In this document: piece after piece, positions 1,426 to 38,845 of the stretch
Position numbering within the stretch: position 1 is the first letter of the stretch
Layout: each line of letters begins with the position of its first letter
Source: Asterias rubens
Lineage: Eukaryota
DNA length: 64,000 bases
Assembly (NCBI RefSeq): GCF_902459465.1
Contig: NW_022985693.1
Coordinates: forward strand, 1,178,001-1,242,000
Reading direction: 5' to 3'
Notes under the pieces: model-generated
What the model was told of the DNA's origin: nothing
The model's database searches: none
What the model saw: the letters and a program-made list of their open reading frames with translations, nothing else
Translations under genes and position numbers: made by a program

Positions 1426-1569
1426 ATGATGGCGCGGCCGGCAGATCAGCAATTGCTGGTGTTTGCAATTACTTTGTTTCTCTGCCTGTCCGTGGAAGCT
1501 TTCCATTACAAAGGAGGAAGCATTAGTTGGAGAATTGCTGGGTACAATGCTGAACAGACTGAAGTAGAC
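1426..1569 (+). CDS. Exon 1: signal peptide + mature N-terminus
   Basis: MMARPADQQLLVFAITLFLCLSVEA-FHYKGGSISWRIAGYNAEQTEVD, donor GTAAGT, phase 0; joins in frame to 12128 across a 10.6 kb intron. Confidence 0.85.
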
Positions 1570-4500
1570 GTAAGTCCAAATTGCATAGTTAAATAACTCT
1601 GTGATGAAGCCAATGCCGAAACAAACGCAGAGTCTTGTATTTTAGGGAAATATTGCCAATATACCTTTATAGGTGAAGAGTATATTCTGAACACTATCAG
1701 GAACCCATAGCTTGTTGCTGTTGTATCTTTGTACAGATTTTGAAATCCTCTAGTTTGGAATTTGAAAATGTCTTCTTATTTTTTTGTTTTTTAAAAAACC
1801 GTATTGCCTTTGGTATTTTGAAATTTTCGATTGTTTAAACCGATATAAATGTAGATACAAGAAATCTATATACATGAAAAATTTTCATTTTCAAAATGTT
1901 GTATTGTTATTGTGCCCTTTGTAAAGGGGCAGGCAGCCCTCTCAGTCTCAAATATTTACAAAGCTTGCATGCAGGCATAGCGTCGTGCAATGTGCTGTTT
2001 GGACTAAACGATTTCCTGTTTCAGTTCTATGAAGCTTCAGACAACACTAGTCGTAAAAAAGGTCAAAAAATAGTCAATGTAAAAAAAAAGTACAAACCAT
2101 GGACAAAGTAATGTTACCTTAAAATGAGCCAGATATTTGAGATCAAAGATCTCCGACATCGGTAGTTTTCAATGGCTTTTGCTTCGCAGTTTAATCAGGA
2201 ATAGTACGATCTTGGCAGCTGGATAGTTTTATTCTTTCCTCAGTTATTTCTTTTTACCCACTAACGAATGGTTTAACAGGCGCGGATCCAGGGGGGGGGG
2301 GGGGGGGGGGGGGGTGGGGGGGCGCACGCTCCCCTGTTTTGTCGGGCAAAAGAAAAAAGAAAAAAAGGAGGGAGAAAAAAAGAGGAAAAAAAAGGCAGGG
2401 ATGAGGGGGGACGACACATACCTGGGTATTTTTTTTTTTTGTAAAAAAAAACCTATTAATAACCCGTCGTAGGCCTACCTTGTACACACTATTTTATTTT
2501 GGGCAACCATTATTTCACTCACAGACACTGTCTCATGAGGAATTTAACGTTAATCTGGGCGTGTGGAAAGCGTGTTTACCGCCGTGAATTCGTCGCGATC
2601 ACCATTTCCATCGCCCAGCCCTGATTTCGAGGAGGCGAAAAATCACACGCCTGATCCCTCTCGAAAATGCACGCCCCTGGCATACATTTCCGGTGTACAT
2701 TGTAAAATAAATTAACGTCGTAAAAACTGTTTTTTGTTTGTCTTCTTCAGTAATTAATATTAATGACCATGTTAACAATTGCTTTGTCTGAAAATGCAAG
2801 TATTTTGATACCACAGTTATAAATGTGCAAAACATTGATCGCCACCGTTTACACAGCAGATTGGGGAAAAACTATAGCGGCCCATTAATCGGTCCAATCC
2901 ACTTCTTATCCTTGGCCAAAGCACCTGGTATACAATTCTTCCGCTTTTTGAACGAAAAAACACGATCTGCAACGATCTGCAACGACCAGTGCACTAAAAA
3001 TGGTGTAGACCTGTTACAAAATAATTATCGGCCGTTGATGGGAACTCATGCTTTTTTGGTTCATGTGAATTTCTCCATTTTGGTTATTCTCAAAAATTTC
3101 CCATGGGTAAACCTGATTTTAAATTAATATTATTGGAAGTCAGTAGTGCATCTCCATAGAAATATTATGCTCTATTCTCTCTCTGCATCTGTTAACAATC
3201 CTGTTTTGTTATTATTTTTTAATCATGGCTATAGTTTGTTGGGTATATCAGTCCCACTAGCGCATAAAGCCAAAAAAATCCCCGCTTGACGTAAGCTCGG
3301 AATTCACTGCTTGCCTACGGTAAGCAGAGTCATGAAATTTTGCCCAGCACATGCCTAGTGGAATTTGTTTCATATTTATTTTAGTTATACCTTTATTTAA
3401 CCAAAAAATTGAGAAGAAACAACTTTCCCATTGAAAGCACTAACGACAGTGCCAATTTAGTAATACAGAAAGAAAAAAGAAGAAGCTGTTTACCGAAAGT
3501 GTATTGGTTACATTTTTTAATCTAAAAACTAAAACCGCACAGTCACGAGTTTGAAAACTTTAGTTATGACCTATAGAAAAGGGCGGCGAGAAAAACACAC
3601 TTTTGTTTGGTGGGTGTATGTTTGTGTCCCTGCGTTCCCAAATCAGTGATCCGTACTGCTCCGCATTGATCTATTCATATACCGAACTATAGTATTATGA
3701 ATGCTTGGTACGGTTAACTCAAATTCTGTGTATTCCAAGGTGTGGTTTATTATTTTTAAAATACTAGTTGAACTCAAATAATATTGGTTTGCTTGGCGCA
3801 AGACCGCCAAGACAACTTTAAAAAGGTTAGTTATATCATTTTGAACACTGTGAATTATGAAATACCGGTCGCTTGACAGGGTATTAAGCGCGTGCGATAA
3901 AGACCCGGCATACTTTATCCAATGTGACAGGAGTTCCTGTGCCCCCCCCCCCCCCCCACCACTAATTGCGAAATGTGTACAGACTTTTTCTAAAAGCACA
4001 CTCTTTTGAATCCTCATCATGCGTAACTTCCCATTATGGAGGCAGAATCTCCGGCGGACAGAGTATCCCTGGGACACTGGATCCAAGCTTTGTTTGATGT
4101 TGTCAAGCTTTTTTATTGCGAAGCCGAAGCCAAAGCTCAGGCCGGAATTTGAAGAAGGTCTTTAGGGAAAAGGTACAAAAACATTTTTTTTTTAACGAAC
4201 AAAAACAATTGTCGTTCGGGCCGGCCGAGCACCTTAATAATACCGTGTTGTTTATTTATGGGAATAAACAGCACTGAGATGGCCAGCCTAGGTCTCTACG
4301 GGTAATGGCCTTGGGGTCGACCCAGGGAAGCTAAACGAACGCACCCAGTGATTACTACCAACATAGACTTGATTCAAGTTATTCTTCTGTATCTCCGCCG
4401 TATGGACCCCGCCTTTTTGGCTCGTTCGTTTAGACACAATTAGCAGCCACCAACCAACCGGTCGTTTCAATACAGCCATTCTACCTCCTTGATACAGCTA

Positions 4501-7500
4501 TGTAGCTACGGCTACGGCTCGATCGACTGCCATAATTATTTTCCGACTCATACAACAATCTGTCTGATTCGGTTTTAACAAAGATCCGTATGGTATTTAA
4601 AAAAAGAATTGTTATATTATTTAAAAAAAGCTGTTGGTGTTTATAAAAATGTTTCCATAACTTCATTTTCTGTATCTTGTTGACGTAAGGAGGGATATGT
4701 TAATAATATATTTTATCCCGCATTTTCACAAACATTTAGTAGGCCTACCGTTTTGATCCAGAACCATAAACTAACCAATTGCAACGACAGTATGTCGGAA
4801 CCATCTCCATTATTCAGTCAGTATAATGGAGATCAATGATCGATGAAACCTCTGATGATGTAACCTCCACATGTTTTACCTAAATAACTGTTATTTGATG
4901 TATTTTCAACCTTTTCATTTTTGTTGTGCATAAATAAACACCCGGCCCAACACCTCAACAAACAAACAATTTGTGATAGAGCTATAGCTCTACACACAGG
5001 GTGCGTTCGTTTAGATTCCCTGGGTCGACCCCGGTGTGTGGCGGTTGGGCCCACGTTTGTCCTGGAAAAAAAACCCACCACACACCGGGGTCGACCCAGG
5101 GAAGCTAAACGAACGCACCCTGTGATTACTACCAACATAGATTTGATTCAAGTTATTCTTCTGCATCTCCGCCACAAACACGCCCCCACACATCACCAAA
5201 GATACAATGGGTGCGTTCGTTTAGCTTCCCTGGGTCGACCCCGACGTGTGGCGTTTTTTTTATATCCAGGACGAATGTGTGGAGATAATTACCCACGTTA
5301 GTCCTGGAAAAAACCAAGCACACCGGGGTAGACCCAGGGGAGTTAAAACCATCCATGAACGAACGCACCCTATAAAAGCACGCACCCTAACCTCGTGTAG
5401 CCTGACTACTGAGGGCGCTATTGTAATGCACCATTAATGTTATCGTTTTTGTCAATACACATACACACACATCCCGTGCCTCTCTCTGTTGTGTACACCG
5501 AATCAGCAGTGTAATAATTTATATCGGAATATTGTCAGTACAGTTTTAAGTACCTGAACCAGGCTTTATGTGCACAACAATTGGATGCTTTTGTTAACAA
5601 ATACTACCAAACCGAGGTTAGTTAGAAAGAGATGCTAAGTAATAAAAGTAACTGATGCATTAGACCATGGAGGTCGAATTAGATTAGACCCAGAAACTGG
5701 GGCGCTGTACTCGACGACAAAGAATGTCAATGTCAAAATTTCGAAAAAAGGAGTACAGTGCCCAAGTTACTCAGTCTACTGATGCATAGTTTGTTAGTTT
5801 CGTGTTTGGTAGACTATAGTTGCGATAACGTAAACGTAACGTACGTTACAATAGAGAGGTTTCGCAGAGTCACCGAAACTCTTACGTGAATGGATACGTC
5901 ATAATACGTCATCACCTTTGGGAGGTCCATGTGGTGATGATAACCGTTGTACACAACAAGTTAGAAATAGAATAGTCGCTCAAAACGGGAATCTGTCGCC
6001 ATACACGTATTAGTAAACGAGTTTATTTTGTTCATGTTTTTGTAGCGGATTGTTATTTTTTAATGTACCAGGTTTTCACCATGTCTATTAATTAGAGGTA
6101 TCATACATGGATGTAGTTGGACATTTTGTAACCACCATGCTTCGAAAAAGAGAAATGGCGATTAATTGTCCATGGGTGCAGCCATTTGGTTAATAGCGCC
6201 CTCTTCAGCCTCAAGCTGAGGGTAAGTTAGCTGAGAGTATTCGTTAGAATTTTGCGCAACAAAACTACATAGCTCACTTGACGCGAACGCGTATGGTTTG
6301 ATATCTGTATGCAGATTCGTATCCGCGACTCTGTGAAACATCTGTTATCGCAACTAGGTAGACTAGAGACTCTACAAAAACCCACCTACGTACCAATGTT
6401 TTGGTTTTCAGTTGCAATAAAAAGAAGTATAGCTCTCTTTTGTTTTTAACAACGATCGGTCGTCCTTTCTCTTAACTATGATTGATGAATCTGACTTGAG
6501 GAAATGATGATGTTAAAGAGAGACATCTGTTGAGTTAAGTATTCCAGCCCAAAAAAGTGGGCTACAGCTCTATATGCGTTCATGGAGGAATAAGATTTAA
6601 GAACACCATCCATGCATGCATTGCATGTTTTTTTAGTGAACACTCGTTTTTAGTTACATACATGATACAGTTTGCATTTAGGGTGGTAAAGTTTACATGG
6701 TAAACCGGCAGGATCTTTAAGTGAGGACTTAAGCCACTTATATATTTGAGTCATTGCAGCACGAATGTTGAGTAGGACTGCAGTTTCCATGTCAATCACT
6801 TCATCAATATCAGTAGGCCTATTATTACTGGTATTTAATAATAAAAAACACCTCATCAATAAAGTGGCTGTCTATAAATGGGCAATTCCACCAAAAAGTG
6901 TCCTCGGCCAAAAATATTGAAGTCAAATTTGTGGAGTTAAATTTAAAGGAGCAAGAAAGAGTGGTACCTAGTGATTTCAAATCTATGTTTGTTTCATTTT
7001 TTTCTTCTTGGTTTTCCATGTTTTTCATCGTTTATTAAAAAAGCTTTTTTTTTGCCAAATTCATGATTTTTGGGAAATGTTTGGCACAGTTGTCTATTAT
7101 GCCCTCCTGGTTACATTTTAGATGATATTTTAATTATTCTTGGCTTAAAACATATAACTGGTGATAGGTATTCACAATTTTAAAGGAACTTCATTGTAAA
7201 TTTATTCACAGGGTGCTCCCACTCGTTTTAATTAGCCATTAATTACCAATTATGAAATGTAATGTCCATGACATTGCATGGTGTTTAGTTTTATATTCTA
7301 AAGCCAGTAAGAGATATTTTCATGAGACTTCATACGCAAAGCTAGTTTTTAGGGGCTAATCCTATAATGCAAGAAAATTAATAAAAAATTTATTACAATT
7401 GTGCTAACGAGCGTCATGGACATTACATTTAGCGTCATGGACATTACATGTCACCTGACACTTACCTTTTTGAAGGTAAATGCTACAATATATCAATTGG

Positions 7501-10500
7501 ACCTATTGTAGGTAAATCTTGACTAGTCAAAGAGAACATTTGTCATAGACCTCATCAGAAATTTGTTTCAAGCTCATGTTTAGCAGCGCGTTTAGTGGCA
7601 ACATCGTGCACAGATTCTACAAACTGACAGCCCAAATCCGAGCTTTTCAGGTGAGTTTTCTCATGGAACTGTTCTTTCCTAAAAACATTCAAATGACATT
7701 TTACATACTGAAATGTATGTGAACTGTTGGTGAGGCATGTTTAAATGAATGTAGGACATTATAAACACACTTTATCATCAAAGAAGATTTCTCAAGGCCT
7801 AGGCGTAATGCAGATTTGTACACATCTACGGATAGCTTGGATACAAAGGCGTCATACATAAAGTTATTTTTTATTGTTACATAATTTCAGAATGGCTAAG
7901 ACTCGAGTAGAGAGGCAGAAAAAGTATAGAGAGAAAACAAGACAAAATCTTGAAACATGATTGTGATAAACAAAGCCCCATGCAGCCAATCTTTCCCTCA
8001 TTTGTTGTTCTCCGTTCTTGTTTTGCATGTCAATCTAGGTGGATTGTGTAGAGGATGACCTCAATGACTGTCTCGTATTTGGAAAACTAAGGAAGCAGCT
8101 ACATTTGGCCTGTTCCTCCCAAGAAGTCATCCCAACTCATTTTAACTGATCTTCTAGGAATTGTTCACCCAGTCTTGAACATCGCAGTATCCAGATCAAC
8201 TTTGAAAATGACAGAAACCTTTAATGTTTAATTTCCATTTACTGTCGTCACAAAATGTTTACGCAAGATGTTCAGTATATTACTCAAGATGAACAATCAC
8301 CTTGTGAGAAACACATAAAAGGGAATTATGTGAAAGATAATTAGAAAAGACAGGTTACTTCATGTATACCTACATCTTTGGTCTATCATAACTACTCCAA
8401 GGCAAAAGCCAGCCTGGTTAGATGTGGACGGAAAGTGCAAAAAGGGGACTTACCGAGGGGCGGAGTTTAAGCGAGATTCTGGGGGAGTTTTGGTTCTTAA
8501 AAATGTTTGGAAGAGATTAAACATTAAGATAGGGACATTCATTATACTTTAAAACACATATTAACAGCAAGGCAGCACATGGGTTGACAAATTCAGGGTA
8601 AAAGCATGATGCATCATTTTACAAGTTTGACGTAATGTCCATGACGCTAAAAATAACCCAAAATGTCCATGACGCTCTATTAAGACGTGTAACAAGAAAG
8701 TTGACAGGTTTTCATCACTGTTCATGTTAACTACTTCCCTGTTTAGAAAATAAAAAGGTATTCTAAAAAATTTGAACTTTAACTTCACAGAGTTTTGGAA
8801 TTGAGTGTGTTGTACCCAAAACCCACTTCCGTTTTTCGTAATGTCCATGACGCTCGTTAGCAATGCTCTGACTCCTTAATTAATTTGAACTTTTCCAAAT
8901 ACATAGTATCATTTGACTTACTAGGACACAAGATACTAGTATGAAACACAAAACTATATATCAAAGCTACTTGGTGTGTTTAACTGACCAACAAAGTTCT
9001 AAAAATGTCTCCGAACGTCCATGACGTGGAATTGCCCAAATGTCTGTGCTGTTTTGAGTTTCAGTTTCTGGAAAAGCAAACTTTCTGTTGACTATTTATT
9101 GTTGACCACAATTTTATTATTATTACTAGGGTTTATTAAAAAGACTGCTGATTGATTGCAGCCTACTAGCTGAATTACAAAACAGTTTACATTAAAGTTT
9201 AAAGGAATACAAAAAGGTCATCTAAAGTCAGTCCGCGCAAAGTGCAGATAATGCAATGTTGCATTATTGTGCAACATTGAGTAGCAGAATTGAGCAACGT
9301 TGGCGAATTGCACTACTTCAAAGTTGCACTATTCTGCAACTCTTGCATTCAAGCACAAAAAGGGAATCAAAAAAGGCTTTGTTGGAATAGTTAAATTCAT
9401 ATAATAGTATCGTTAAGTTCCTTACCCAACTTTCTATCTGTGCAAATCAAAAAAGCTATCGGTGCGTTTTCGCACAAATGGCTTTTGAAAATCACCATTT
9501 TACTGTGTCAGATTGTATCCTCGTCCAGTGCTATTTATTTATAACGACTATAATTTTAAAAATAACATCATTTAGAGTCAATAAAAATATAATGCTACAG
9601 TTTTGAACAATTTAATATTTTAATGTTAAAATTTAATAAAATATAAGCTTTATCGATGTTAAGTTTTTAAATGTATTGACGTGCCTAACCATTTATGAAT
9701 TGCGCGAAACATAAACAGATGGCGGGAGACTTGGAAGAGCCTAGTAAATAATAACCGTTTTAGTAACTTGCTCCTTGTCTTTTCTGAAGTAGTTTGGATA
9801 ACAAATTTTTTATGTAGATGAGTATTTTATATTAAAGCAGGGAACCTAAGTAAATATAGTGACAACTTTGGCAAGGGTAGGCTGGTCTGTGTTCAAAGCT
9901 ACCGTAGTTTGAAACTTGAGATCGGCCGATGCCACACCAACCCAACATCTAGGCATCAGTAGGCTAGTCCACCTTACAGAATTTTTCACCCCATCGCTGG
10001 CAAGACAATGGGTCATGTGCCTTAGAAGATTGGACATGAAATCTCTTGGGAGACGCTGGCAGCACGAAGGTAGTGGCCAGGGGTGTGTTGTTTTCACCAG
10101 GGGGATGATTTACGCCGGACAAGTTCGTTGTGCATGCTGGACCCAATATATTTTGGAGGTTGTGAGTGGGGGAGATGTGCAGGCGGGTCTCTAAGCCAAA
10201 TGTATCCCGGCCCGTCCCATTGACATAATTGATTTAAAACAGTAGACTTATTAATAAGTAATTATTTAAATTGTAAAAGTGTAACATTGTTATAGTTGCT
10301 GCCTTCGATTTGATTTGAAAGCCACATTTTTTGTTGATTTTTAAAGACTTATAAAAAAAAATCAAGAAATGTTTTCACTTTGATTTACTAATATTGTGCA
10401 ATCTTGATTTATCATTACCATAAACAAAACTTGATTTGATCAGTTAGGCAATTTTATTCAAGTGTTTTTGTATTTTAGACACATTTTGAATTATTTTAAG

Positions 10501-13500
10501 TGACCATGCAGTTTGCAATTTGTCATTTTATATTTTAATTAAATCATTCAACCACTGTCAGTAAATTTGTCTAGAAATAACTTTACTTTAAACACAAGTT
10601 ATAGTATATAATTACTATTTATTGCTCTTTCAATGTTGAAACCTAGAAAATGTACACTTTTGAAAAAAACTTAGAAAAAAATAAACAATTTGAGGGTTGA
10701 TAATTATAATAATATAGGTATTTATATAGCGCCTTTAACAAAGATCAAAGCGCTGAACAATAAACAAGAACAATACAAAGAAACAAGAAACACAAAACAA
10801 CAAAGGACTAATGACGAGGCTGACAGAAAAAGTAGGTTTGCGATTTTTCTTGAAAATGGGAGTAGAATATGATTCCCTGATGAGTTTAGGTAACTTGTTC
10901 CATTCCTTCGGCCCAGTCAGGGAAAAAGATTTTGAGCCGCAGATCGAGAAGGCCTGTGCTCACAGAGAAGGGATTAAAACTTCATTATAAATATAAAGAC
11001 AAAAAAGAACTTATCAATGTTCAGAAATAATTGTATTTATTATAAAGAAATTTATTACAATTAAAACCTCAATGTAAATACAGAATATAATTGTGTAGCT
11101 TAAAAAAAATAATAAACCTTTAAACTAGACGCTATTCTCCTGTGTAGTATTAGCTCCCCCCTAAACACCTCCCCCATCCTCCACCCATACCCAACCCCAT
11201 CCCCAACCAGCCCAACTATCCTAAAACAACAATAAAGTTGTTTGATTTTACCCTCAGACCATAAGCTGATTACACATTGACAGTATTTCATCTAGTTTTC
11301 AACGTAGCTTCAATTTTTCTACTTTTACACCGGAAGTTGCATTATTGCGCTACTGGTTGCACAATAATGCAACATTGCATTATCTGCACTTTGCGCGGAC
11401 TGAAGTAAACCGTATGAAATAAAACTGAGAGGTATTTTTAGGAAATCAAAATGCACAAAGCACATAAAAATGTTGCACAGGAGGCCATGTAAAATACAAC
11501 AACATTCTAAAAAGCACACAAAACTACAGTTCGACATACTTGTATACAACAGAATTCAGGTATTGAAAAAAAGAGTGAAAATCACTTTCAATTTGACAAA
11601 GGTTGCACTTGGTTGGAACGATAACTGCCGGATCATACAATTCATTATTTGATGCTTGATTTCAAAGGACACTACTCAACATCTGTGACATCTGTAGGAA
11701 AATAGTTTTACTTAGTTTTTTGGGTCAGGGAAGATTATGTAGTAGGCGATACTATATTTGTTTACATGTCTACATCATGCATAGAAACCTTCAAGATTCT
11801 TACGGGGCTCGAGGATATAGATGCCAGCAGTCTATTCACACCCTCACAAACTATTAACACAAGAGGCCATGACATGAAGCTCTTCAAAAAAAGCTAAACA
11901 AAGGGCTCAATCTCAGAAAACACTTCTTCACACAACAAGTTGTAGATAACTGGAATAGACTCCCAGCCAAAGTGGTCAAAGCCAAGACAACCAATCAGTT
12001 CAAAAACAGCTTCAACAAATACCTGAATGAAAATGGATATGTGGTGTTAATTTATAAGCCTACAATATTAAAACTCCCATCAAACCTTAAGTGTAACCTT
12101 AACTGATTGTTGCCTTTCTCATTGCAGGTAGTAATCTCTCACCGAGTGTCATGGCAAGATTCAAGTTCAGACAGCGTTCGTTGCACACAAGACAGAGTTG
12201 ATACCAAAGCCCGCTATGGTGGAGGTGTTATGACCTGTCAAGGTTCTGGTACTGTTGAGTGTCCAGAAACCACCTTGGCTGGTGGTAGAGATTTTGTTTG
12301 TACAGATTATAATGTTGGTGCAGTATGGAGCTCTGGTGTCAACAGTATAACCCAACGCTTCCCTGTGCCAGGCACAGCCAGTGATTCGTACTTTGTGGGG
12401 TTAGTATTGTGTTTCATTATTTTTTTAGATTGGTATGTTCTATTTCTCTCAAACTGAACACCTTGGTAGTTTATTTAAGTTGTACTCTAGCTAGATTGAA
12501 AAGTACGTTTGTGAGATGATGTAACTTGTTGAGGTGGTTAAAACAAAGTCATATGTCAAACCCAAATTCTTTAGTTTGCCTTAAAAATGCCAGTTTTAAA
12601 ATTACTTCCTACATGTAGTCTTGGCGTTAAAAGGACATGTTGCCTTGAATCGGTCCAGTTGGTCCATGAAAAGCATTTGTAAACCATTTGTTATGAAATC
12701 GATATAGTTAGAAAGATGTTTTAACAGTAGTATATAATGATCCACACAAACATGATTCAAAATTGCATGGTTTTCCTTTTACTTTGCTAATTAACACGGT
12801 CAGCAACTTTAATGGAGTCAAAAACTTTACTCCATAAAATGGCATGCCCTGCTAGGAAAACAATGCAATTTTGTGTGGATCAGTATATTTTTATTTAAAA
12901 CATCTTTCTAACTATGTGCATTTTGTAACAAACACTTTTCATAGACTATTTCGCCCCATCCCAGGCAGCGTGTCCCTGTAAGCAGAGTATTTTCATAATT
13001 TCTAATATGGAGGATCTTGATTGTCCACTGGTAGTATTCGACCTTCACAGGTGATTCAGTGTTGTGTGAATGGGAAAGTTGTTATAACCGAGTTCCTGCA
13101 TATTCAAGGTTTGCATAATACTGGTACTTCATGACATTATTTTTGGCATGCATTTGTAAAGGAGACACATCCTATTCCACACATCAGTTCTGATACATGT
13201 AAATCTAATGGTTATGTTGTTTCCTATTTCAACAATTGGCAGGTATCAGGGATGCTGTTGGGCAGATGATATAACGGGAGGAAACTATGGTCTCATGACT
13301 GCCATCAATCTTTCACCACGGTTGGACAATGGACTGTTGAACTCCTCACCCAAAACAACAATGTTCCCAGTTGTCCGAATACAGCGTGGATGTACAGAAA
13401 ACATCAGAATCCCAAGTAACTACACAATTAGGATATTCAACTTTAAGTATTACTTACTTTCACTTCCACTAGGTCCTTGCTTCAAATCCCACCAGGGGCA

Positions 13501-16500
13501 CCCTATGTGGATTTGGGTTTTTAGTCCCTACCTGACTGTGTGGGTTTTCCTCCCACATCTAAAACTGAAACTTCCTTCCTTATCTTTTCTCCATTGGGTT
13601 ATTGGGTAATAAACTGATTAAGTTCGCTTTTCTGAGAGTACTTGGCTTCACAACCAGAATCAATAAATTAAAATGGTCGCAAACGCTCATTTTAAGACAG
13701 TCTGGACTCAACAACAATTGAGTTATGTTGCAGTAAATGCTGCCATTTTTAATCAGTTTTACATTTTGTTTTCTATCACAGTGTTAGATGCCGATAGAGA
13801 TTATGTGTCATGTCACTTAGCAACCAATCCGGATGACATTGCAGACTCATGTCACTCACTGTGTGATTTTCGTGTGCCAAATATTGAGCTGAATCCAGAC
13901 AATGCTATGGTAAATCGTGATATTTTATTTCAAGATATTTCAAGATATTTTATTTCTGTAAAATCCTTTTTTTACAAGGTACAGACAGCATTGATGCAAA
14001 CTTACTCTTTATTATTTTGGTTATAGGGTTGCATTCTGCAGGTGACTGCTTCTGGTTCCAGATCACAATATGCTGTTGCCTTGGTGGTACAGGACAGACA
14101 ATTGCCTTCTTCGAACCCCTTGAGCAGTGTTCCCCTCCAGTTTGTGCTGGAGTACTATGGAACTGATAATGAACAATGTGCACCTAGACCAACCTTTGTA
14201 CCTGACACCCCAGAATATGGTATCGTTGTAGTTGCCCAACCAACAGAAGCTGGTATGTCTGGAAGTATAACTATCGTTGTTCGAAGTTCTGCTGATGGGG
14301 AGTCGTAAGTTGAGATTCAGCTGTTTTTTATAATGAGAACAATTTGTTGCATTCTTTAAGTTATGGTGTGTGTATTGTTGTGAAAGTGTAAGCAAAAGTA
14401 AAGCAAGTGAGGTATTTGTCAAAAAAATACGGGTTGTTAACAAAAGCAAAACCCAGAGGTTTCCACTGATGATGTGGGACCCAAATTAATACAATGAACT
14501 GATGCAAAATAATTTGTCTATTGCTACAGCATTACTGACATTGTGACGCTCTCTCCACTCAACACAAGAAAGACAGAATTGACCACAATAAACGATAGAG
14601 AGGCTTCAATTGAAGTTACCTTTATACAGGGAGCTGAGCAACCCGGTAGCCATTCCATGTGCTTCTATGGTAACCAGACCAATGGGTAGGTCTCAACTTT
14701 GACTAGCTTTTAAACCTGACACTCTGTGTTTAACCTTGTAGGGCCTTGTAACACAACAATGCAACTTGGAGGCAACCAACTGCAGTGCATGCTGCAGACC
14801 CACTTCATTAGTACATGAGTAATTTTTTAAACATTGTCCCCCCGATCCCCAAGAAAAATATTTGAACAGTTGTAGTGTCTTTCTTCTTGGAGACTGCCTT
14901 GAACTGGTTGCTTGCAAACTTCCTCATGTGACATCGCCCTATGATTTTTTACTCAACTCCCATGAACAAATTCCGAGTTTGTAAAAGATTCACAAAGATG
15001 GTAAATGTATAACTTGTTTCAGATGAGGCTGTCCTTGTGCAAAAAGTAAAAGGATAAAAACTGTAAACTCAAAAGTGAGGAACATAATCAATTAAAAGTG
15101 ATTTTAAAATTTTCTTTTATCTGGGCGTCATTCCACCATTTAATTTGGTAAAACAGTTTTTAAAAATAAATTGGAACTTTAAAGCTGTTAAAATGGTCCT
15201 TCTTATTGCAGAATCTCCTCTGAAATTCGTTGCATTACTGTGGCATTTGATGGTAAGTAATCTGTGTTAGTTTTATTCCCTTTATTATAAGTTCAAAAAA
15301 TAGTTAATGGCCTGACGTTTCGACCCTAGCAGAGTCTTTCTCGAAGGCTAAATGACAACACAACAAACATGAACAGGTAACTAAGTGAAACATAAGCAGT
15401 GAAGTGGAAATACATGAAAAAAGCAAGGGGTAAAAATGAATAGGGGGACAAAAAAAGGGGGGTGGGGTGAAGGGAAGGGACTGGCTTGACCACAAGCAAG
15501 AAGATGGAAACACAAAGGACAAAATCAAGGGTGGGGAGGTGGGGTAAAAAAGTAATTAATTGGTACATGAGGCCCAGGCTTAAAGGCTATGGGGAAAAAG
15601 GAGACGGCAAAACAAAAGGTTTATTAGCCGTTTCCTTTATTCTAAGTTCTGACATTGTGAATGGCATACATTCAGTCATCAAAATAAAACACACATTTAG
15701 ACATTTGTGATTGAAATTGAAAGATAGGATATGAACAAAAACACCCTTTTACATAATTAATTGTTGTGCTTTCAGATGCTTGAGAAAAGCCTCAGGCCTG
15801 AAGTCTTTCAGATTCAAATATTTCAGTGAGAAGTTACCTCTTTCTCAAGAACTATGCTACTTCAGAGGAGTTGTTTCTCATAATGTTTTATACACGTACT
15901 ATCAATAGCTCTCTGTTGCTTATTACCAAGTAAGTTTCTATGCTGATACATATTTTGAGAAATTACCAAACGTGTCTAGTAGATATAATTTATGTAGATG
16001 TGTTTACTAGATGGTAGTATTGGATAAACTCACAAAGTTGACTGCAACCTTTCATACACTTTCATATGTTGTGTTGTATTGTTGTGATTATGTTACAGTG
16101 ACTGCACCACAGATCGTTTTGGATGCAGTTTTTCCAAATGTCGGTGAAGCAGTCGATCCAAATTTCGAGTTTTTTCAGATCGTGTTTAATCAAGAGGTAG
16201 TGAATTCTCAGTATTTTATTCTTACTTGGATGTAAATTAATACTACTGAATGGGCTTATAATCAATTTATTTTGCCATATATGTGTGTAAATTTATTTGC
16301 CTTACATCAAAAATTCTTTTTTTTTTGTCATTACAAAAGGAAAACACACAATAAGTATCTGGAAATGATTGAAGTGAATTAACGTTGCTTTTCAAGATTA
16401 AAAAGCAAACTTTAACTTGTAAATAAATTTATCCTCACCTATATCTTGATGGATCAAATCATCAGCTAGCATTTATTTTTCAGATTTTGTTTTGAACAAG

Positions 16501-19500
16501 TTTATTTGATACACAAAAAAGATATCAGGACACTGTGGTGTCTAATTTTCTCAATGTGTCTGCTACCTCTCTAGGTGAAAAGGCCTTTGCAGGATCGCTT
16601 TATATCTCTCTTCAATTCCATTGACGATAGTAATCCTGTTCAAGTCTTCAATACATTTGAATCAGAACTGCTGGTATTTCCTGAGAGGAACAGTGGCAGT
16701 GGTACAATACCTATGAATGTCAATACACCATTGGATCCAGGAGAGTATTACTTTGTTGCAGATGAAGGGGCTGTTGTTGGATCAGCTATTGGTGGTCTAG
16801 ATTCAGAGGCACTTGCATCAAATGTTTGGCATTTTAGCGTCACTGGTAAGAAAATTGTTGATCCGAAACAAGTGATTTATTAATTAAAATTTCTGTTGCG
16901 GGTTTCTTTCTGTTGATGATCCGGCTTGTATTTTCTGTATTATTGCTTCTTTGATAACAAATCTCTTGTTACTATGAAACATTTACCATCTTTTCAATAC
17001 AGGTATTCCTCCTGACCCATGTCTAACCCCTGAACTGTGCCAAAATGGTGGAACCTGTGATCCATTACCAGAAAACAGTGGCTTCACCTGCTTATGCTCT
17101 ACTGACTTCAAAGGAGCCAATTGTGAAAACCGTATGTCTGTCAAATTATTTTTATCTTTTAATAAAGTGTTTATTTCAACATTTAATGTAATCCATATAC
17201 CTAAAAGCATTATCAAAACAATGTGCTTGGTTGGATCAGGCTTATATGAAGAACTTTGTTATTAATATTTGGATTTTAATTAAGCTCTGTGTATACTTAC
17301 TACTCTCCCAAGCTCTGTAATAAAGAAATCCACAGGCATATCAATTGAGTCAAATTCAATTTGTGATTGTGCAATGCTAGAGCAGATGTCTTGCAAGTAG
17401 ACAACCAAACTAGCCTTGGGCTGGAAGGTGTGCGAATTTTATATTTTAGCGGCAGGTACCCCAACGATATGGGCAAAAAACATATTCTTTATTGCTGGTG
17501 CAAATTTAACATCTGTTAACTTGTAGATAGTGAAAAATTTACTGATATGGTTGTACACAACATTTGTTGAAAGAATATTCTTGAGTGAATGATGGTCCTT
17601 CATCAGTTTACAGATGAATCAAATTTTGTTTTTTAAAAGGTGCTCATAAGATGTTTGTCTTTTGTTTTTTTGTATAGAAAATCCATGTAGTGTTTCAGCA
17701 GATGTTTGTCAAAACGATGGAGTATGTGAACCGAATGGTGATTTCACTGACTATTCTTGCGATTGCCTTCCAAACTTTGTGGGTGAAAGCTGTGAAAATG
17801 GTAATAATGTTATTGTCTTGAAAGTCTGTTTTGCTGAAATATGAGTATAAATAATTTTAGTTGTGTGAAAATAAGCATTTTGAAAGCCCTTATCCAGTGC
17901 TTTTCAGAAAGATTCTGTTACGTCATCACTCATGATACGCCATGTGTGGGAGCTCCAATTTGGATTGGCGCTTGCTGTTTGGTTTTGTTTGGTGTGATTT
18001 TCAACAGGAGATGCCATTGAAAATTTTTGAGGAAAACGCGGTTGAACATGTTCTTTTTTTGCTTGTTGAAAATTTAATCTATGCAAAACAAGTAGGCCTT
18101 AAAGTCACCTGGAAATAGAATTTTTTTTCTTCAAACATTAGGGTATATGCCTCGATCTAACATCAAACACACGTATGTGCAAGTACATGCAAGTCCCAGT
18201 AGTGAGTTTGTATGTTTGGAAGAAAAAAAAACTTCTTGCATTTTTCCGGCAATGTCGACCAGGTGTATTGCTACTGGATGAAGCAAAACAAGTAAAGATC
18301 GGGTCAGTTTGCAAAGTGGTCCGGTCCGACGTCTTTTCTAGCGCTTCGTGCTTCGAGAATCCAGAATACACCACACGTTTTGACATAAAGAGAAAAGTTC
18401 TTTTCTAAAACATGACGCCATCCCAACAATTTTTCCAGCTAGTGGGAAGTCGAAGAAGGTACCTGAAAGATGTGATGAACCTAAAGGAGCATCTGCCTAA
18501 TGTGAAAAAAATTTGGTATTGTTTCAACTTTGAGGGCATGTTTTTAGCTTGCACCAAGCGTCAATATCTTGTGTTGGCACTGCATGCGATTCAACGTGCT
18601 GGGTAATCCGAGTGGACCGTCCGCACAGCAGCCATACAGTGCGTGCAGTCTGCTCCGTGACAGTAGTTCTGTACGTAGACATCATACCGATGAGGTACCC
18701 AGATGTAGTGTACGGGGCTAGACTACACATTTTCTCTTTATTTTTGTTTATTCATATTCCACTCATTAAGACACATATCATAGTGGCAAAAGCTTTATTT
18801 TGACAAAAAACCACTTCCAGGTGACTTTAAGAGAGGATTTAAACATGTGTGTTAAAGACAGTGTACACTATTGGTAATTGACCAGTCTTCTCACCTGGTG
18901 TATCTCAACATATGCATAAAATAACAAACCTGTGAAAATTTGAGCTCGATCGGTCGTCGGAGTTGCGAGATAACTATGAAAGAAAAAACACCCTTGTCAC
19001 ACGAAGTTGTGTGCTTTCAGATGCTTGATTTCGAGACCTCAAGTTCTAAACTTGAGGTCTCAAAATCAAATTCGTGGAAAATTAATTCTTTCTCCAAAAC
19101 TATGGCACTTCAGAGGGAGCTGTTTCTCACAATGCTTTATACTATCAACCTCTCCCCATTACTCGTTAGCAAGTAAGGTTTTGTGCCAATAAATATTTTG
19201 AGTAATAACCAATAGTGTCCACTGCCTTTAAGGTGAAGCATCCGACTCAAGCTAAATTTTAAAGAAGCATATGGACAAGAATAAATACATTCCTGAATTT
19301 AACCAATTAATAATGACACTGAACATTTCATAGTCTGATTTATTGTTTTGGGGTTAAGATTGCTAAATCAGTTGACAAGTTTATTGGCAGTAGTTGTAAC
19401 ACTGGGATTTTAAACATTGTTTATTGATGTGTTGTTGTTTTACAGGGAACCCATGTTTGTCTGCACCATGTCTAAATGAAGCAGTATGCACCCCATCGCT

Positions 19501-22500
19501 TGCAAACACTGAGTATACCTGTAGCTGTGCTAGTGGATTCATGGGCACACACTGTGAAAATGGTAATAAAACAACCCAAACTGATAAATATAACTAGTTC
19601 TTTAAATTAGTGCCCTGGATGTCATTGGGCCAATACTATTATTATTATTATTATTATTATTATTTCATTTTATCACAGCATGCAAAAGAAAGATCTCATT
19701 TTCCTTTGTGCCGGTAACTCCTCGAGTCGGGCTACGTCCCGTAGCCTTAGATCTCAAGGGTCTTTCTCAGGATCCTCGCTGTTCCCAAAAGCGCTGCCTT
19801 CTGTAACAGATCTACCCTCACATTTGTCCCTATTTCATCTAGATGTTTCCCCAGTGCTTTGGGAATGGTGCCAAGTGCTCCAACCACCACGGGGACTACT
19901 TTTACCTTTACCTGCCAAATCTTACGAAGTTCCCTGGCCAGGTCCTGGTACTTCTCGATCTTTTCCATCTCCTTCGAAGCTACCCTTGTATCACCTGGCA
20001 CAGCTATGTCAATGAGATGACACATCTTCTTCGTCTTATCTAATAGCACAACATCCGGACGCCTATGTTGTATAACATGATCGGTCTGAATGTTAAAGTC
20101 CCATAGGATCTTGACCTGGTCGGTCTCTACAACTTTCTCCGGAACATGGTCGTACCATTTCGCAAGCACTTTGACACCATACTTCTTACACAGATCCCAG
20201 TGAATCACCTTGGCCAGCTTGTCATGTCTTCCTTTGTACTCCGTCTGGGCCATCTTACTGCATTCGCTAACAATATGAAATACAGTCTCCTCTGCTTTAT
20301 TGCACATTCTACACATAGGAGAGACGTTTGCTTTCTCTATCCTTGCCTTCATTACATTTGTCCTTAGAGACTGGTCTTGCGCCGCAGTAATCGCAGTAAT
20401 TATTATTATTACTCATGGTTTGTTAAAACACTGCAATACAGCAGCTAAAAGCCGAAATGTACAGTTTACGAAAAAAAGGCATTAAAAATATTACTAGGGG
20501 CCTATTATATCAAAAATATGTACACACAGGCAACAAATTTGTGACAGAAAAATATTAAAAAGAGCACAAAAACATTCTGATTAGATTAAAAATCAACTAT
20601 CGCTGAGCTAATGTGTTGCTCATAAGGCTTTTTCAAACACAAAATCAACCTCTACCCTTGCATGTACCCATTTATTCCCCTGGATGAAGAGAAACAAATG
20701 TAGTAAAAGCATCTTGCTCAAGGACATGATGTCATGATCGGGATTTAACCCCAACTCTGATGACTTAACCACCATAATTTGAATTTGATGCTCTTAACCG
20801 CTCGGCCATGACACCCTACAACCTAAACTAAAGCTACCATTGTTTTTCTCCATTTTGCCCATCTATTCAGGTAAACTTGTTGATTTGTTGTGTATTTTTT
20901 ATTACAGAGGATCCATGTCTGGCTTCACCGAGTGTTTGTCAAAACAATGGAGTGTGTGCGCCTATAAGTGAAAATACAGACTTTCAGTGTACATGTGTAG
21001 GTGCATTCATTGGCAAAGACTGCTCAGATCGTAAGTTATAGAATTGGCAATGCATTGTACATTATTGTAAATAGAATATAATGGAGAGCATTATTATCGT
21101 TGTGATTTTTACAAATATGTATTGCTTACTTAATATAGATCCGTTGCATAACTCGAATTGCTACAGGAACGCTGAGGTTACATTTGTTTATTCAGAACTA
21201 CTCATTGTTTATTTGAAGTAATGGTTCATTGCTTTACTTTCCATACAGCACTTCCAATTGATCCCTGTTCTGTTCCTATGCTCTGCGAAAACGGTGCAAC
21301 ATGTCATACACTGCCAGGCGAATATAACTACACATGTGAATGTGCAGAGGGATTTATGGGTCGGAACTGCAGAGACGGTAACTATTAAATGTTTAAAGGT
21401 TCAATGACCTCATAAAGCTGCTTAGTAGTAACTTCCATTATGATTCTTGGCAAATGGGAGATCAGTTAAAGGCACTGAACACATTTGGTAGTTGTCAAAG
21501 ACCAGTCTTCTCACCTGGTGTATCCCAACATAAGCATAAAATAACAAGCCTGCGGAAATTTGAGCTCAATTGGTCACCGAAGTTGTGAGAGAGTGATGAA
21601 AGAAAAAACACCCTTGTTGGGTGAATTTGTGTGGTTTCAGATAGGAATAAAATATTTCTGGCTAGAAGTCTTTTTTTTATTCTAGTGAGAAATTACCTCT
21701 TTCTCAAAATCCATGCTATTTCAGAGGGAGCCTTTTCTCACAATGTTTGATACTATCAACAGCTCTCCAATGCTTGTTATCAAGTAAATTTTTAAGTTCT
21801 TGATTTGGAATCTATTTTATTAATAACTGAAATGAAAATAATTAATTCCTTATGCAGAATTTGAATGTCCTGATTCTGCTAGTTACTCATCATGCATAGC
21901 TCCATGTGGTCCTACATGTTATGACCCGATTGGTGGGTCAGGGGAGAATTGTACAGATCCTTGCACTGAGGGTTGTGTTTGCAATGAGGGATACCTTCTG
22001 GAGGATGACCTTTGCATACCAGCTTCTGAATGTGGGTGTTTGTGGACTGAACAGTATATTCAGGTAAGATATCTTTAGATATATTATTTTGGGTTCTTTG
22101 TAAATTGTTCGGTTGTCCCCTTTGTTTTTGAGGGAGGGGCGGGGGGGGGGGGGATGTTTCCAAACATTTTGTGTTGTGTTTGAAATAATATACAGTCGAC
22201 TCCCGTTAAAACTTTGGTTGCAGGCAGTTTATTGCCAATACTTACATTAAGAGTCTTGATTTTCGTTGGTAACCACCCGTTCAATGCTGGATGGTTCATT
22301 GCTAACGCAAGATACCAGGGAAGATTTTGCTGTTTCGTGTCATATTGCTCATGCATATGTGTGCACGTGCAATACACCTAGCCGCAGCTAGCAGGTTACT
22401 AAAAATAGAATCTTGATTTTCCATGTCCTTTTGCATTAAATAGTATTGATCATGCAACTAAATGCTTGTAAGTTGCGGGTGTTTCTTTTCTTCTGCAAAT

Positions 22501-37500: not shown

Positions 37501-38774
37501 ATGAAATTTCTATGTTTTAATTAATGTCTTTATTAATTCTTCTGGATATTATCTTGGCCAGCCTGGGGAAACGTATGTCAGTTTGGACTGTGGACAGCGT
37601 TGTACATGTAATGGACAAAATGAAACAGTCTGTGAGGATGTTTCCTGTGCTGTCAATGCAATATGTGAAGTACAAGATGGAGAGCTTGGCTGTTACTGTA
37701 ATGATGGTTTCTATCAATCTGAAGAGGAATGTCTACGTGAGTAACTCATTTCTTTATCAAATGACACACTTTATCCACTACGTCATACGACAAATATAGC
37801 AACATGTATCCGTATTGTACTCAACAATAACAACTAAAATTTAATCAATAACAACACTTAGTTGACAGAAATATTTTGTATCTCTACTTATTAATTTTGG
37901 TTTTTACCCATACACTGATGTGTGTTAGCACTGTATACTCAGTACTTTCCCGAGTCCTGTGAAAAAATATCACAGACATGTTACTCGGGTGGGATTCGAA
38001 CCCACGACCCTTGCAATTCTAGAGCAGTGTCTTACCAACTAGACTACCGAGGTTGCCCGGCAGCTAGAGGCAGTTCAAATCCTATGTTTTGGCAGCGGGT
38101 ACCGCAACGATATAGTAGATGTTAAATTTGCATCGGGGATAAAGAATATTAGGTTTGGTTTTTACCCATACACCGATGTGTGTTAGCACTGTATACTCAG
38201 TACTTTCCCGAGTCCTGTGAAAAAATATATCACAGGCATGTTACTCGGGTGGGATTCGAACCCACGACCCTTGCAATTCTAGAGCAGTGTCTTACCAACT
38301 AGACTACCGAGGTTGCCCGGCAGCTAGAGGCAGTTCGAATCCTATGTTTTGGCAGCGGGTACCGCAACGATATAATAGATGTTAAATTTGAATCGGGGAT
38401 AAAGAATATTAATTTTTTTATTTTTTTATTTTGGAATCTATAACTCTAGGGTTACCAAAAGGGGGAAATGTCATCATTTCAACACACCCTTGAATTTGTA
38501 TTCAAGTCTCAGACTTGTTTTGTTTGCAATGACTCTCAACCCTGCTTTAATTCATTTGATGTTATTTGATTCAGCGGACCCATGCGATAGTGGTGAAGAG
38601 CATTGCTCAGGGAATGGTAAATGTGTCAGTCATGGTGACGGAACATTCCATTGTGAATGCAACCAAGGCTGGTCTGGTGAAGCATGTGATGATGGTGAGT
38701 ACCTTCAATCAATCAATCAATCAATATTTTGTGTATGAATAAAGTGTTTGCTTTGAAAAGTAAAAAAAAAAAAG

Positions 38775-38845
<71 letters not shown>

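What the first reader, a model, noticed from the sequence alone, without database searches (positions are those of the whole stretch)
1426..15252. N-terminal region resembles Dictyostelium Sib 'integrin beta-like' and bacterial surface-protein N-termini
Seen: the mature protein starts FHYKGGSISW and continues GCCW, NSSP, IP.LDAD.D.V.C, YAVALVVQD, PLSSVPLQF and RPTFV..TP. From memory, an H-(F/Y)-x-G-G-x-I-x-W start right after the signal peptide, with these downstream motifs, occurs in amoebozoan Sib adhesion proteins, patchily distributed invertebrate proteins and Bacteroidetes secreted proteins. Inference: an uncharacterised adhesion or lectin-like domain with patchy, possibly horizontal, history, now spread over 7 intron-separated exons.
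Basis: inference. Interest (0 to 1): 0.7.

Follow-up and report, generated by a model that had tools for sequence, protein, structure and literature searches.

The report
Sib-type adhesion head on mucin-like protein
The first 400 residues of this animal's large secreted mucin-like protein are a three-domain "head" that also caps the Sib adhesion receptors of the amoeba Dictyostelium and some surface proteins of Bacteroidota bacteria; databases already list the module, but nobody has tested what it does.

Summary
All the motifs lie at the stated places, and the seven exons (1426-15252) are joined in transcript contigs exactly as modelled. One detail to note: exon 5 starts at 14027.

- The spliced N-terminus scores 248 bits against a profile of animal homologues from sponges, bivalves and lamprey.
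- It scores 39 bits (E 1e-11) against a profile built only from Bacteroidota proteins. The match is collinear from the His at mature position 2.
- A bivalve homologue passes Pfam PF24907 (SIBA-E_N).
- Its AlphaFold model finds the five Dictyostelium Sib proteins as the top five Swiss-Prot matches (E 1e-22 to 1e-17), aligned to Sib residues 22-390.
- Bacteroidota proteins with T9SS sorting signals start with a signal peptide followed by [STA]-H-F-[RKE]-[GY]-G-x-[ILV]-[ST]-W. They hit PF24907 and PF24908.

The distribution is patchy: 2 of 401 Bacteroidota genomes and 0 of 602 genomes in two other phyla. A tree splits animals from bacteria with 100/100 support. Conserved introns and at least five paralogues argue against recent transfer.

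The module is a Pfam-catalogued, functionally untested three-sandwich head, here fused to EGF/TIL/CUB/VWD-C8 repeats. It is most likely a distal binding module. It is a new member of a known kind. The scan had not noted it on other DNA.

The parts
1426..1569 (+). Exon 1. Start codon, 25-residue signal peptide (1426-1500) and the mature N-terminus F-H-Y-K-G-G-S-I-S-W (from 1501). Ends in phase 0 at a gtaagt donor.
   Evidence: Sequence read; gene model. A loose end before 12128 in a spliced contig reads the last 30 bases of this exon. A sponge homologue (L003) has a phase-0 intron at the same codon.
12128..12399 (+). Exon 2. Core of domain A (SIBA-E_N-like sandwich), including VSW, four cysteines and the CTDY..W motif.
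   Evidence: Joint 12399|13243 in spliced contigs. Matches family profile positions 2-87.
13243..13415 (+). Exon 3. End of domain A (GCCW), the linker R-L-D-N-G-L-L-N-S-S-P, and the first strands of domain B.
   Evidence: Joints; motifs; alignment.
13782..13909 (+). Exon 4. Domain B with the D-A-D-R-D (DxDxD) motif and cysteines.
   Evidence: Joints 13415|13782 and 13909|14027; alignment.
14027..14304 (+). Exon 5. Rest of domain B (YAVALVVQD, PLSSVPLQF, RPTFVPDTP) and the start of domain C.
   Evidence: The acceptor at 14027 is set by spliced contigs. phmmer of this exon against 1.84 billion proteins finds 12 hits, nearly all animal.
14530..14685 (+). Exon 6. Middle of domain C (Ig_SibA-like sandwich).
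   Evidence: Joints 14304|14530 and 14685|15212; family profile alignment.
15212..15252 (+). Exon 7. Last strand of domain C (…EIRCITVAFD). This is the end of the three-domain head.
   Evidence: Joint 14685|15212, and a loose end after 15252 that reads the start of exon 8.
16099..16196 (+). Exon 8. Start of a fourth sandwich. It aligns to the stretch that Pfam calls Big_5 in homologues, above threshold only in P0017.
   Evidence: Gene model; family profile alignment to position 360; Big_5 hits in homologues. Exon 9 alone gave no Pfam hit.
16978..64000 (+). Rest of the same-strand gene, probably one transcript: EGF repeats, TIL, TILa/EGF, CUB, then repeated VWD-C8-TIL-EGF units that run off the window.
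   Evidence: Pfam on open frames finds EGF, TIL, TILa, CUB, VWD and C8. Open frames are listed. Continuity with exons 1-8 was not shown by reads beyond exon 8.

Best explanation
Exons 1-7 encode a signal peptide and a head of three consecutive beta-sandwich domains at the mature N-terminus of a large secreted mosaic protein. The rest of the protein holds EGF, TIL and CUB domains and repeated VWD-C8-TIL units.

The three domains are:
- A, residues 26-163, of the SIBA-E_N type
- B, about 175-302, of the Ig_SIBA-E_2nd / He_PIG type, with a DxDxD motif
- C, about 303-397, of the Ig_SibA type

The head is homologous, domain for domain and in the same order, to the N-terminal region of the Dictyostelium adhesion receptors SibA-E, and to the N-terminal region of Bacteroidota cell-surface proteins exported by the type IX secretion system. 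That much is shown.

The rest is inferred. Because the head always sits at the free, membrane-distal end of long extracellular proteins, it is most likely the ligand- or surface-binding tip, and the VWD-C8-TIL part is a multimerising stalk or gel. The conserved R-x-D-x-G..N-S-x-P linker and the DxDxD motif probably hold the A-B junction rigid by binding calcium, as in cadherin-like domains. The conserved His at mature position 2 starts the first strand.

The gene belongs to an old animal family with conserved introns and several paralogues. It is not a recent bacterial import.
For: - Gene model and expression: ag/gt exons and one open frame, with all joints present in spliced contigs.
- Family membership: 248 bits, E 9e-72 at Z = 1e6, against a 24-sequence profile that excludes the window protein, covering residues 50-429.
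- Sib link by sequence: the Mercenaria homologue P0014, residues 28-142, hits PF24907 at 32.1 bits against a cut-off of 28.1. P0013 gives a weak Ig_SibA hit.
- Sib link by structure: the AF2 model of P0014:22-500 (pLDDT 86.6) finds SibC, B, A, E and D as ranks 1-5 (E 3.5e-22 to 1.3e-17, TM 0.54-0.60). The match is to Sib residues 22 to about 390. The next hits are generic Ig arrays at E 1e-11 and TM 0.2.
- Bacterial link: PF24907 is above its cut-off in 2 of 401 Bacteroidota genomes. The ORFs start with a signal peptide plus [STA]-H-F-x-[GY]-G-x-[ILV]-x-W. They score up to 63.6 bits on PF24907 and 31.4 bits on PF24908, and also carry HYR, SprB and Por_Secre_tail domains. The bacteria-only profile finds the window protein at 39 bits, E 1e-11, collinear from His2 to residue 311. 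Atlas shape matches to CHU_C and Por_Secre_tail clusters reach TM 0.47-0.54.
- Old animal gene: the tree gives one animal/bacterial split at 100/100. Intron 1 has the same codon and phase in a sponge. At least five paralogues with the same exon partition lie on contig C6.
- Adhesion role of Sib: review PMC9197732.
- Even cysteine counts per domain (6, 6, 2) fit disulfide-bonded extracellular domains.
Against: - No Pfam or NCBIfam model hits any single exon of the window protein. A six-frame PF24907 scan of the genome did not pick up the window's exon 2. The SIBA-E_N assignment for this protein is therefore transitive, resting on homologues and custom profiles.
- The structure was predicted for a homologue that is about 30% identical, not for the window protein.
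- No binding, calcium or expression-site data exist for the head in any organism that I could find. The Sib literature ties adhesion to the whole receptor, not to this region.
- Domain A alone gives only background-level matches to solved structures (best Z 7.4), so the fold suggests no ligand.
- The His is missing in the lamprey member P0010.
Confidence: 0.75

Rival explanations
1. The three sandwiches are only a passive spacer or stalk, generic Ig-like filler with no binding role of their own. Their N-terminal position is incidental.
For: Domain A has only a generic Ig/Fn3-like fold with no informative solved relative. Domains B and C resemble the common He_PIG and Big_9 Ig domains. No functional data exist for the head.
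Against: Wherever the N-terminus is complete, the module sits at the extreme mature N-terminus in animals, amoebae and bacteria. A conserved start motif and a conserved inter-domain geometry (TM 0.54-0.60 across three domains) span three kingdoms. Spacers rarely keep position, order and linker motifs over such distances.
Confidence: 0.2
2. The animal gene segment was recently acquired from Bacteroidota by horizontal transfer, or is bacterial contamination of the assembly.
For: The distribution is patchy. Bacteroidota proteins share the start motif and the module.
Against: Seven spliced exons are confirmed in transcript contigs. Intron 1 is shared with a sponge gene. At least five multi-exon paralogues lie in the same genome. 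Animals and bacteria fall on opposite sides of one long 100/100 branch. Identity to the bacterial proteins is low: the animal-only profile gives them only 13.9 bits.
Confidence: 0.03
3. The resemblance to Sib and to bacterial proteins is a chance or compositional similarity among Ig-like domains.
For: The single-exon search also pulled in a bacterial aBig_2 repeat protein at 23% identity, which looks spurious. Ig-like folds match each other easily.
Against: The match is collinear across three domains from the first mature residue. Scores lie far above shuffles. Foldseek leaves a gap of about ten orders of magnitude between the Sib proteins and generic Ig arrays. Independent Pfam models (PF24907 and PF24908) hit the bacterial proteins above their cut-offs.
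Confidence: 0.02

Closest known systems
Dictyostelium discoideum integrin beta-like proteins SibA-E, N-terminal region (Pfam PF24907 SIBA-E_N, PF24908 Ig_SIBA-E_2nd, PF24619 Ig_SibA)
   Same: The same three-sandwich head sits directly after the signal peptide. A homologue of the window protein passes PF24907, and its model superposes on Sib residues 22-390 (TM 0.54-0.60, E down to 3.5e-22).
   Different: Behind the head, Sib proteins carry a VWA domain, a single transmembrane helix and a talin-binding NPxY tail (PMC9197732). The window protein carries EGF, TIL, CUB and VWD-C8-TIL repeats instead. No VWA domain was seen in the open frames I scanned. Sequence identity is only 16-21%. It is not a Sib orthologue.
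Bacteroidota cell-surface proteins exported by type IX secretion (CHU_C or Por_Secre_tail sorting domains, HYR/SprB repeats) with a SIBA-E_N N-terminus
   Same: The start motif after the signal peptide is the same, as are the CC[RW], N-x-x-P, D-P-D-x-D and P-x-F-x-x-[DT]-P motifs in the same order. The bacteria-only profile finds the window protein at E 1e-11.
   Different: The bacterial proteins are intronless, have a bacterial export signal at the C-terminus and carry different downstream repeats. They lack most of the animal cysteines of domain A and have an FGDG/HTY pattern there instead. They are separated from the animal proteins by a long, fully supported branch.
Animal VWD-C8-TIL proteins (zonadhesin, IgGFc-binding protein, alpha-tectorin, otogelin type)
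   Same: The body of the window gene is a series of VWD, C8, TIL and EGF units with a CUB domain.
   Different: From my own knowledge, those vertebrate proteins are not described as having a Sib-type head. I did not test this.
Other animal proteins with the same head: lamprey LOC116955294 (ZP domain), oyster 'DMBT1' K1PJG4 (EGF+SRCR), Mactra, Mercenaria and Mya proteins, and about 2,200-residue sponge proteins
   Same: The same head sits at the N-terminus, 25-40% identical, with the same motifs.
   Different: A different body follows the head in each case: ZP (P0010); EGF plus SRCR (P0013 by reading its sequence, SRCR by Pfam in P0017); sushi (P0014); EGF-type and nidogen-type (PF06119) domains (P0011); RHS (Mya); or long runs of bacterial-type Ig domains (sponge). 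The sponge genes keep only intron 1.

Membership tests
Pfam PF24907 SIBA-E_N (domain A) | Profile match above the curated cut-off (28.1 bits) | tested here: inconclusive
   The domain is split over exons 1-3 and the spliced protein could not be passed to the Pfam tool. Exon 2 alone gives no hit. The six-frame genome scan did not report the window exon. Indirect support is strong: homologue P0014 scores 32.1 bits, and a profile of PF24907-positive bacterial proteins finds the window protein at 39 bits.
Pfam PF24907 SIBA-E_N (domain A) | Position at the mature N-terminus directly after the signal peptide, with the start motif H-[FY]-x-G-G-x-I-x-W | tested here: met
   The window protein reads ...VEA|FHYKGGSISW. 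The same start is seen in bivalve and sponge proteins and in Bacteroidota proteins. Foldseek aligns query residue 1 to Sib residue 22.
Sib-type three-domain head (PF24907 + PF24908 + PF24619) | Three sandwiches in the same order with the conserved linker (R-x-D-x-G..N-S-x-P) and the DxDxD motif | tested here: met
   The family profile aligns window residues 50-429 without breaks. The bacterial profile aligns residues 2-311 of the mature chain. The model of the homologue matches Sib over about 390 residues. PF24908 is above its cut-off in bacterial L148.
Sib proteins (integrin beta-like adhesion receptors) as whole proteins | Extracellular VWA domain | tested here: not met
   The open frames of the window that I scanned give VWD, C8, TIL, EGF and CUB, but no VWA. 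The gene runs off the window, so a distal VWA cannot be excluded.
Sib proteins (integrin beta-like adhesion receptors) as whole proteins | Single transmembrane helix and cytosolic NPxY motif that binds talin | not tested
   The 3' end of the gene lies beyond the window. The features are as described in PMC9197732.
VWD-C8-TIL mosaic proteins (zonadhesin / FCGBP type) | Repeated VWD, C8 and TIL domains | tested here: met
   VWD scores 57.9 and 45.7 bits, C8 50.6 bits and TIL 43.6-52 bits on window open frames.
Bacteroidota T9SS surface adhesins | C-terminal sorting domain (Por_Secre_tail or CHU_C), intronless bacterial gene | tested here: not met
   The window gene is spliced and lies in a 418 Mb genome with multi-exon genes. 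The bacterial relatives carry Por_Secre_tail. No such domain was seen in the window frames scanned.

The most novel reading that the evidence does not exclude
The head is one cross-kingdom adhesion module whose function depends on its free N-terminus. In nearly every member with a complete N-terminus, from Bacteroidota and animals, it starts at mature residue 1-2 with x-His (Sib aligns from its residue 22). This would fit an N-terminal amine plus imidazole metal site (an Xaa-His type copper or nickel site) or an N-terminal strand that must be free in order to engage a ligand. If so, gliding bacteria, amoebae and early animals share one mechanism of surface attachment, spread by an ancient transfer between Bacteroidota and an ancestor of amoebae and animals.
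Probability: 0.12. Interest if true: 0.65.

Novelty: new member of a known kind. Interest (0 to 1): 0.42.

Why it matters
Sib proteins are the main candidate substrate-adhesion receptors of Dictyostelium, yet the part of them that touches the substrate has not been defined. This work shows that their N-terminal head is a discrete three-domain module. The same module caps very different extracellular proteins in sponges, bivalves, lamprey and the window's animal (rotifers and echinoderms by shape match), and caps type IX-secreted surface proteins in a few Bacteroidota.

That gives a concrete, testable candidate for a conserved binding tip. It also supplies many natural fusions (ZP, VWD-C8-TIL, SRCR, RHS) that hint at its use in matrices, mucus-like gels and cell surfaces. 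In addition it is a clean case for asking whether an adhesion module moved between bacteria and early eukaryotes.

For annotation, it explains an otherwise unassigned 370-residue N-terminus that per-exon domain searches miss.

Tried and rejected
- Per-exon Pfam and NCBIfam scans found nothing, because the domains are split by introns.
- Single-exon searches of the window's own genome found only the window itself. Paralogues appeared only with a profile.
- The search for homologous proteins with exon 5 found only the window's own product, because of the length window.
- PDB sequence search with exon 5 gave nothing meaningful.
- Atlas feature searches gave only weak leads: Rotifera, He_PIG/Big_9 families and one Bacteroidota cluster.
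- The pattern scan of bacterial genomes with an animal-specific motif found no relative. The animal-only profile barely sees the bacterial proteins (13.9 bits).
- The first own-genome profile scan was swamped by an unrelated downstream Ig repeat.
- The profile search of the big protein collection returned 395 hits, but the 120 listed were all close sponge-type relatives. Distant members such as Sib were not visible.
- Sib sequences could not be fetched with any tool, so Sib is absent from the tree. The Cornillon 2006 and 2008 papers are not held.
- No paper mentions the Pfam accessions.
- Domain A alone against solved structures gave only a generic Ig/Fn3-like sandwich: best Z 7.4, and no Foldseek hit below E 0.001. 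I looked for a resemblance to copper-dependent polysaccharide monooxygenases or other enzymes that start with an N-terminal His, and found none.
- The bacterial aBig_2 protein P0003 from the exon 5 search was set aside as a low-identity repeat match.


Full report
**Observation**

The window is AT-rich eukaryotic DNA. An ATG at 1426 opens a 25-residue hydrophobic leader. The mature chain starts F-H-Y-K-G-G-S-I-S-W at 1501.

Eight exons with ag/gt borders give one open frame: 1426-1569, 12128-12399, 13243-13415, 13782-13909, 14027-14304, 14530-14685, 15212-15252 and 16099-16196.

Contigs of two public runs of the same species label hold only the exon share of the stretch. The tool guesses they are RNA; they are not on record as RNA. 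They show every joint between exons 2 and 7. A loose end before 12128 reads the last 30 bases of exon 1. A loose end after 15252 reads the start of exon 8. These data moved my exon 5 acceptor from 14042 to 14027. That adds five residues and a conserved cysteine. So the seven-exon N-terminal region is real and spliced, and most likely expressed.

**What the sequence belongs to**

No single exon hits Pfam or NCBIfam. Reading every protein of a 1.84-billion-protein library with exon 5 gave only 12 hits. Those I could place are animal:
- a lamprey ZP-domain protein (P0010)
- a clam protein with EGF-type and nidogen-type domains (P0011)
- an oyster protein with EGF and SRCR domains (P0013), named
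- one bacterial repeat protein at 23% identity, which I set aside

Searching from P0011 and then from a family alignment gave more members:
- bivalve proteins from Mercenaria, Mya and Mactra
- several hundred proteins of about 2,200 residues, one of them named from the sponge Dysidea avara

The 'metagenome' contigs that carry these long proteins are eukaryotic, presumably host DNA. In L003 the signal peptide and S-H-F-R-G-G lie on a separate upstream exon.

A profile of 24 family members that excludes the window protein scores the spliced window protein at 248 bits over residues 50-429. In the first run of that profile (244 bits for the window), none of 200 shuffles scored. The alignment shows a fixed succession of motifs:
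- [SF]-H-[FY]-[RK]-G-x-I-x-W
- [IV]-S-W-[RQ]
- C-T-D-[YF]...W
- G-C-C-W, or a variant without the cysteines
- R-x-D-x-G-x-[IL]-N-S-[ST]-P
- D-x-D-x-D-x-V-x-C
- a hydrophobic strand ending E/Q-D
- P-L-S-S-[VI]-x-[LM]-Q-F
- P-x-F-[VI]-x-x-T-P
- a final C-I-x-[VL] strand

**Link to Sib**

The Mercenaria member P0014 hits Pfam PF24907, 'Integrin beta-like protein A-E, N-terminal', at 32.1 bits against a cut-off of 28.1, over its residues 28-142. The oyster member gives a weak hit to PF24619 (Ig_SibA).

An AlphaFold2 model of P0014 residues 22-500, built with a 45-sequence alignment, is confident (pLDDT 86.6, pTM 0.74). It is all-beta, with four successive sandwiches.

Against the Swiss-Prot AlphaFold models, the five best matches are SibC, SibB, SibA, SibE and SibD:
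- E from 3.5e-22 to 1.3e-17
- TM by query 0.54-0.60
- 386-473 aligned columns at 16-21% identity
- query residue 1 aligned to Sib residue 22, which is the start of the mature protein

The next hits are generic Ig arrays at E 1e-11 and TM about 0.2.

Against the AlphaFold cluster library the model finds many eukaryotic proteins (E 1e-41 to 1e-16). These include ZP-domain proteins, SibA itself, and an entry named by its source 'Integrin beta-like protein A-E N-terminal domain-containing protein'.

No solved structure resembles the module beyond generic Ig arrays. Domain A folded alone gives only background-level matches (best Z 7.4).

**Link to bacteria**

The shape search of the ESM Atlas listed Bacteroidota clusters with CHU_C, Por_Secre_tail or PKD_6 domains at TM 0.47-0.54. 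These followed rotifer, echinoderm (ZP) and mollusc (EGF) clusters at TM 0.63-0.82.

The record titles confirmed the phylum for nearly all hits. I then scanned with PF24907:
- 2 of 401 Bacteroidota genomes have a match above the cut-off, at 47.8 and 36.6 bits.
- 0 of 301 genomes do in each of two other phyla, reached through records labelled Microcoleus and Clostridia.
- With the first bacterial protein as query, 16 of 301 genomes of its order match. About ten of these matches start at the N-terminus.

These ORFs begin with a signal peptide followed by T-H-F-E-G-G-N-L-S-W, A-H-F-R-G-G-T-I-S-W, S-H-F-K-G-G-I-V-S-W or T-H-F-R-Y-G-x-[IV]-T-W. They continue with C-C-R, N-x-x-P, D-P-D-x-D, a strand ending E-D, and P-x-F-x-x-[DT]-P.

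Pfam gives them SIBA-E_N (up to 63.6 bits), Ig_SIBA-E_2nd (PF24908, 31.4 bits against a cut-off of 27.8), He_PIG, Big_9, HYR, HYR_4C, SprB and Por_Secre_tail.

A profile built only from seven such bacterial proteins finds the window's mature N-terminus at 39 bits. That is E 1e-11 in a search space of 501, with the best of 500 shuffles at 9.9 bits. The alignment runs from His2 to residue 311.

**History**

A maximum-likelihood tree of 16 animal heads (including the window's) and 7 bacterial heads has one branch separating the two groups. Support is 100/100 and the branch length is about 2 changes per column. The window protein lies on the animal side, on a long branch of its own.

Three further facts bear on the history:
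- Intron 1 is in phase 0 at the same codon, nine codons before the conserved W of [IV]-S-W, in the window and in the sponge gene L003.
- The window's genome holds at least five more multi-exon family members on contig C6, with the same exon partition.
- Named animal members come from a sponge, bivalves, a shrimp record and lamprey. Rotifers and echinoderms appear by shape.

This is an old animal gene family, not a recent import or contamination. Three questions stay open because I could not fetch Sib sequences for the tree: whether the module was inherited vertically by amoebae and animals, whether it moved once between Bacteroidota and eukaryotes, and in which direction.

**How it most likely works**

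Shown:
- The head has three sandwiches in fixed order at the mature N-terminus.
- Cysteine counts are even in each domain (6, 6, 2).
- A conserved acidic linker and a DxDxD motif lie at the A-B junction.
- The inter-domain geometry is conserved from animals to Sib.

Established knowledge: SibA and SibC are type I membrane proteins needed for adhesion of Dictyostelium to substrates and particles. They have a VWA domain and a talin-binding tail (PMC9197732). As I recall from general knowledge, SprB-type Bacteroidota proteins with T9SS sorting domains are cell-surface adhesins.

Inferred: the head is the distal binding tip. In the window protein it is presented by EGF/TIL/CUB modules and by VWD-C8-TIL repeats, which in other proteins form disulfide-linked multimers. 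The acidic motifs probably bind calcium and stiffen the A-B junction, as in cadherin-like and He_PIG domains. The ligand is unknown.

The main rival is a purely structural role for the head, at about 0.2.

**Comparison and novelty**

The window protein is not a Sib orthologue: no VWA domain was seen and the body is different. It is not a T9SS adhesin either. It is a VWD-C8-TIL mosaic protein with a Sib-type head.

The three head domains are already Pfam families, and UniProt already names bacterial and eukaryotic proteins after them. The module itself is therefore known. I found no paper that mentions these families or discusses their spread. I rate it as a new member of a known kind.

Its interest is moderate for three reasons. 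The function of the head is untested in any organism. The distribution invites a proper phylogenetic study.

The two earlier notes of the scan on this gene (VWD2 cleavage site; a C-type lectin cassette beyond the window) concern its body and agree with the architecture seen here. The scan had not noted a Sib-type head on other DNA.

Noticed in passing
window 2285-2400: Intron 1 (10.6 kb) contains a run of about 30 G followed by a purine-rich A/G tract.
   Followed up: no
window 11873-12103: An open frame just upstream of exon 2 ends in a '...WNRLP..V.....FK..' pattern. From memory this resembles the C-terminal tail of non-LTR retrotransposon reverse transcriptases, so it is probably a LINE fragment in intron 1.
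   Followed up: no
window 14736-14849 and 15286-15400: Contig and RNA-read depth is very high (about 5,700 and up to 39,000, against 170-490 on the exons). Many loose ends and strand-switch joints occur here. These are dispersed repeats in introns 6 and 7, not part of the gene.
   Followed up: partly
G000 contig C6 near 4.752, 4.773, 8.700, 8.728 and 12.50 Mb (loci L169-L180): At least five further multi-exon genes carry the same head, with the same exon partition as the window gene. The one at 8.700 Mb gives the best sub-threshold PF24907 hit in the genome (24.5 bits).
   Followed up: partly
P0015-P0138; L003: A very large family (395 hits, only the first 120 listed) of about 2,200-residue proteins carries this head followed by bacterial-type Ig domains (Big_13, Big_3_3, Big_5). 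One is named from the sponge Dysidea avara. In L003 the gene is one 6.8 kb exon after intron 1. Most sit in assemblies filed as metagenomes.
   Followed up: partly
P0018, P0025 (Mya arenaria): These clam proteins combine the Sib-type head with RHS repeats (PF05593), and one is named 'WAPA-like'. This is an unusual pairing of an adhesion head with a polymorphic-toxin-type body.
   Followed up: no
L143, L153, L155, L157, L158, L159, L160 (Bacteroidota): A wider set of bacterial proteins starts, right after the signal peptide, with [TA]-H-x-x-[GA]-G-[EQN]-x-x-[YF]. Examples are T-H-L-M-G-G-E-F-S-Y and T-H-I-V-G-G-E-L-N-Y. The two of these that were scanned with Pfam (L153, L155) did not hit PF24907. 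The N-terminal His-start sandwich may belong to a larger bacterial superfamily.
   Followed up: partly
L163 (genome G567): One bacterial member has two 'Cu-binding_MopE' putative metal-binding motifs (73.9 bits) directly after the head, followed by SprB repeats.
   Followed up: no
P0115 (record labelled Halocaridina rubra): A shrimp-labelled protein groups inside the sponge-type clade on the tree. It may be a true arthropod member or foreign DNA in that assembly.
   Followed up: no
L049, L076, L089, L094: A 39-base 16S signature typical of Bacteroidota also occurs in assemblies labelled Microcoleus, Sulfurimonas, Clostridia and Nostoc. Foreign contigs in those bins are the likely cause.
   Followed up: no
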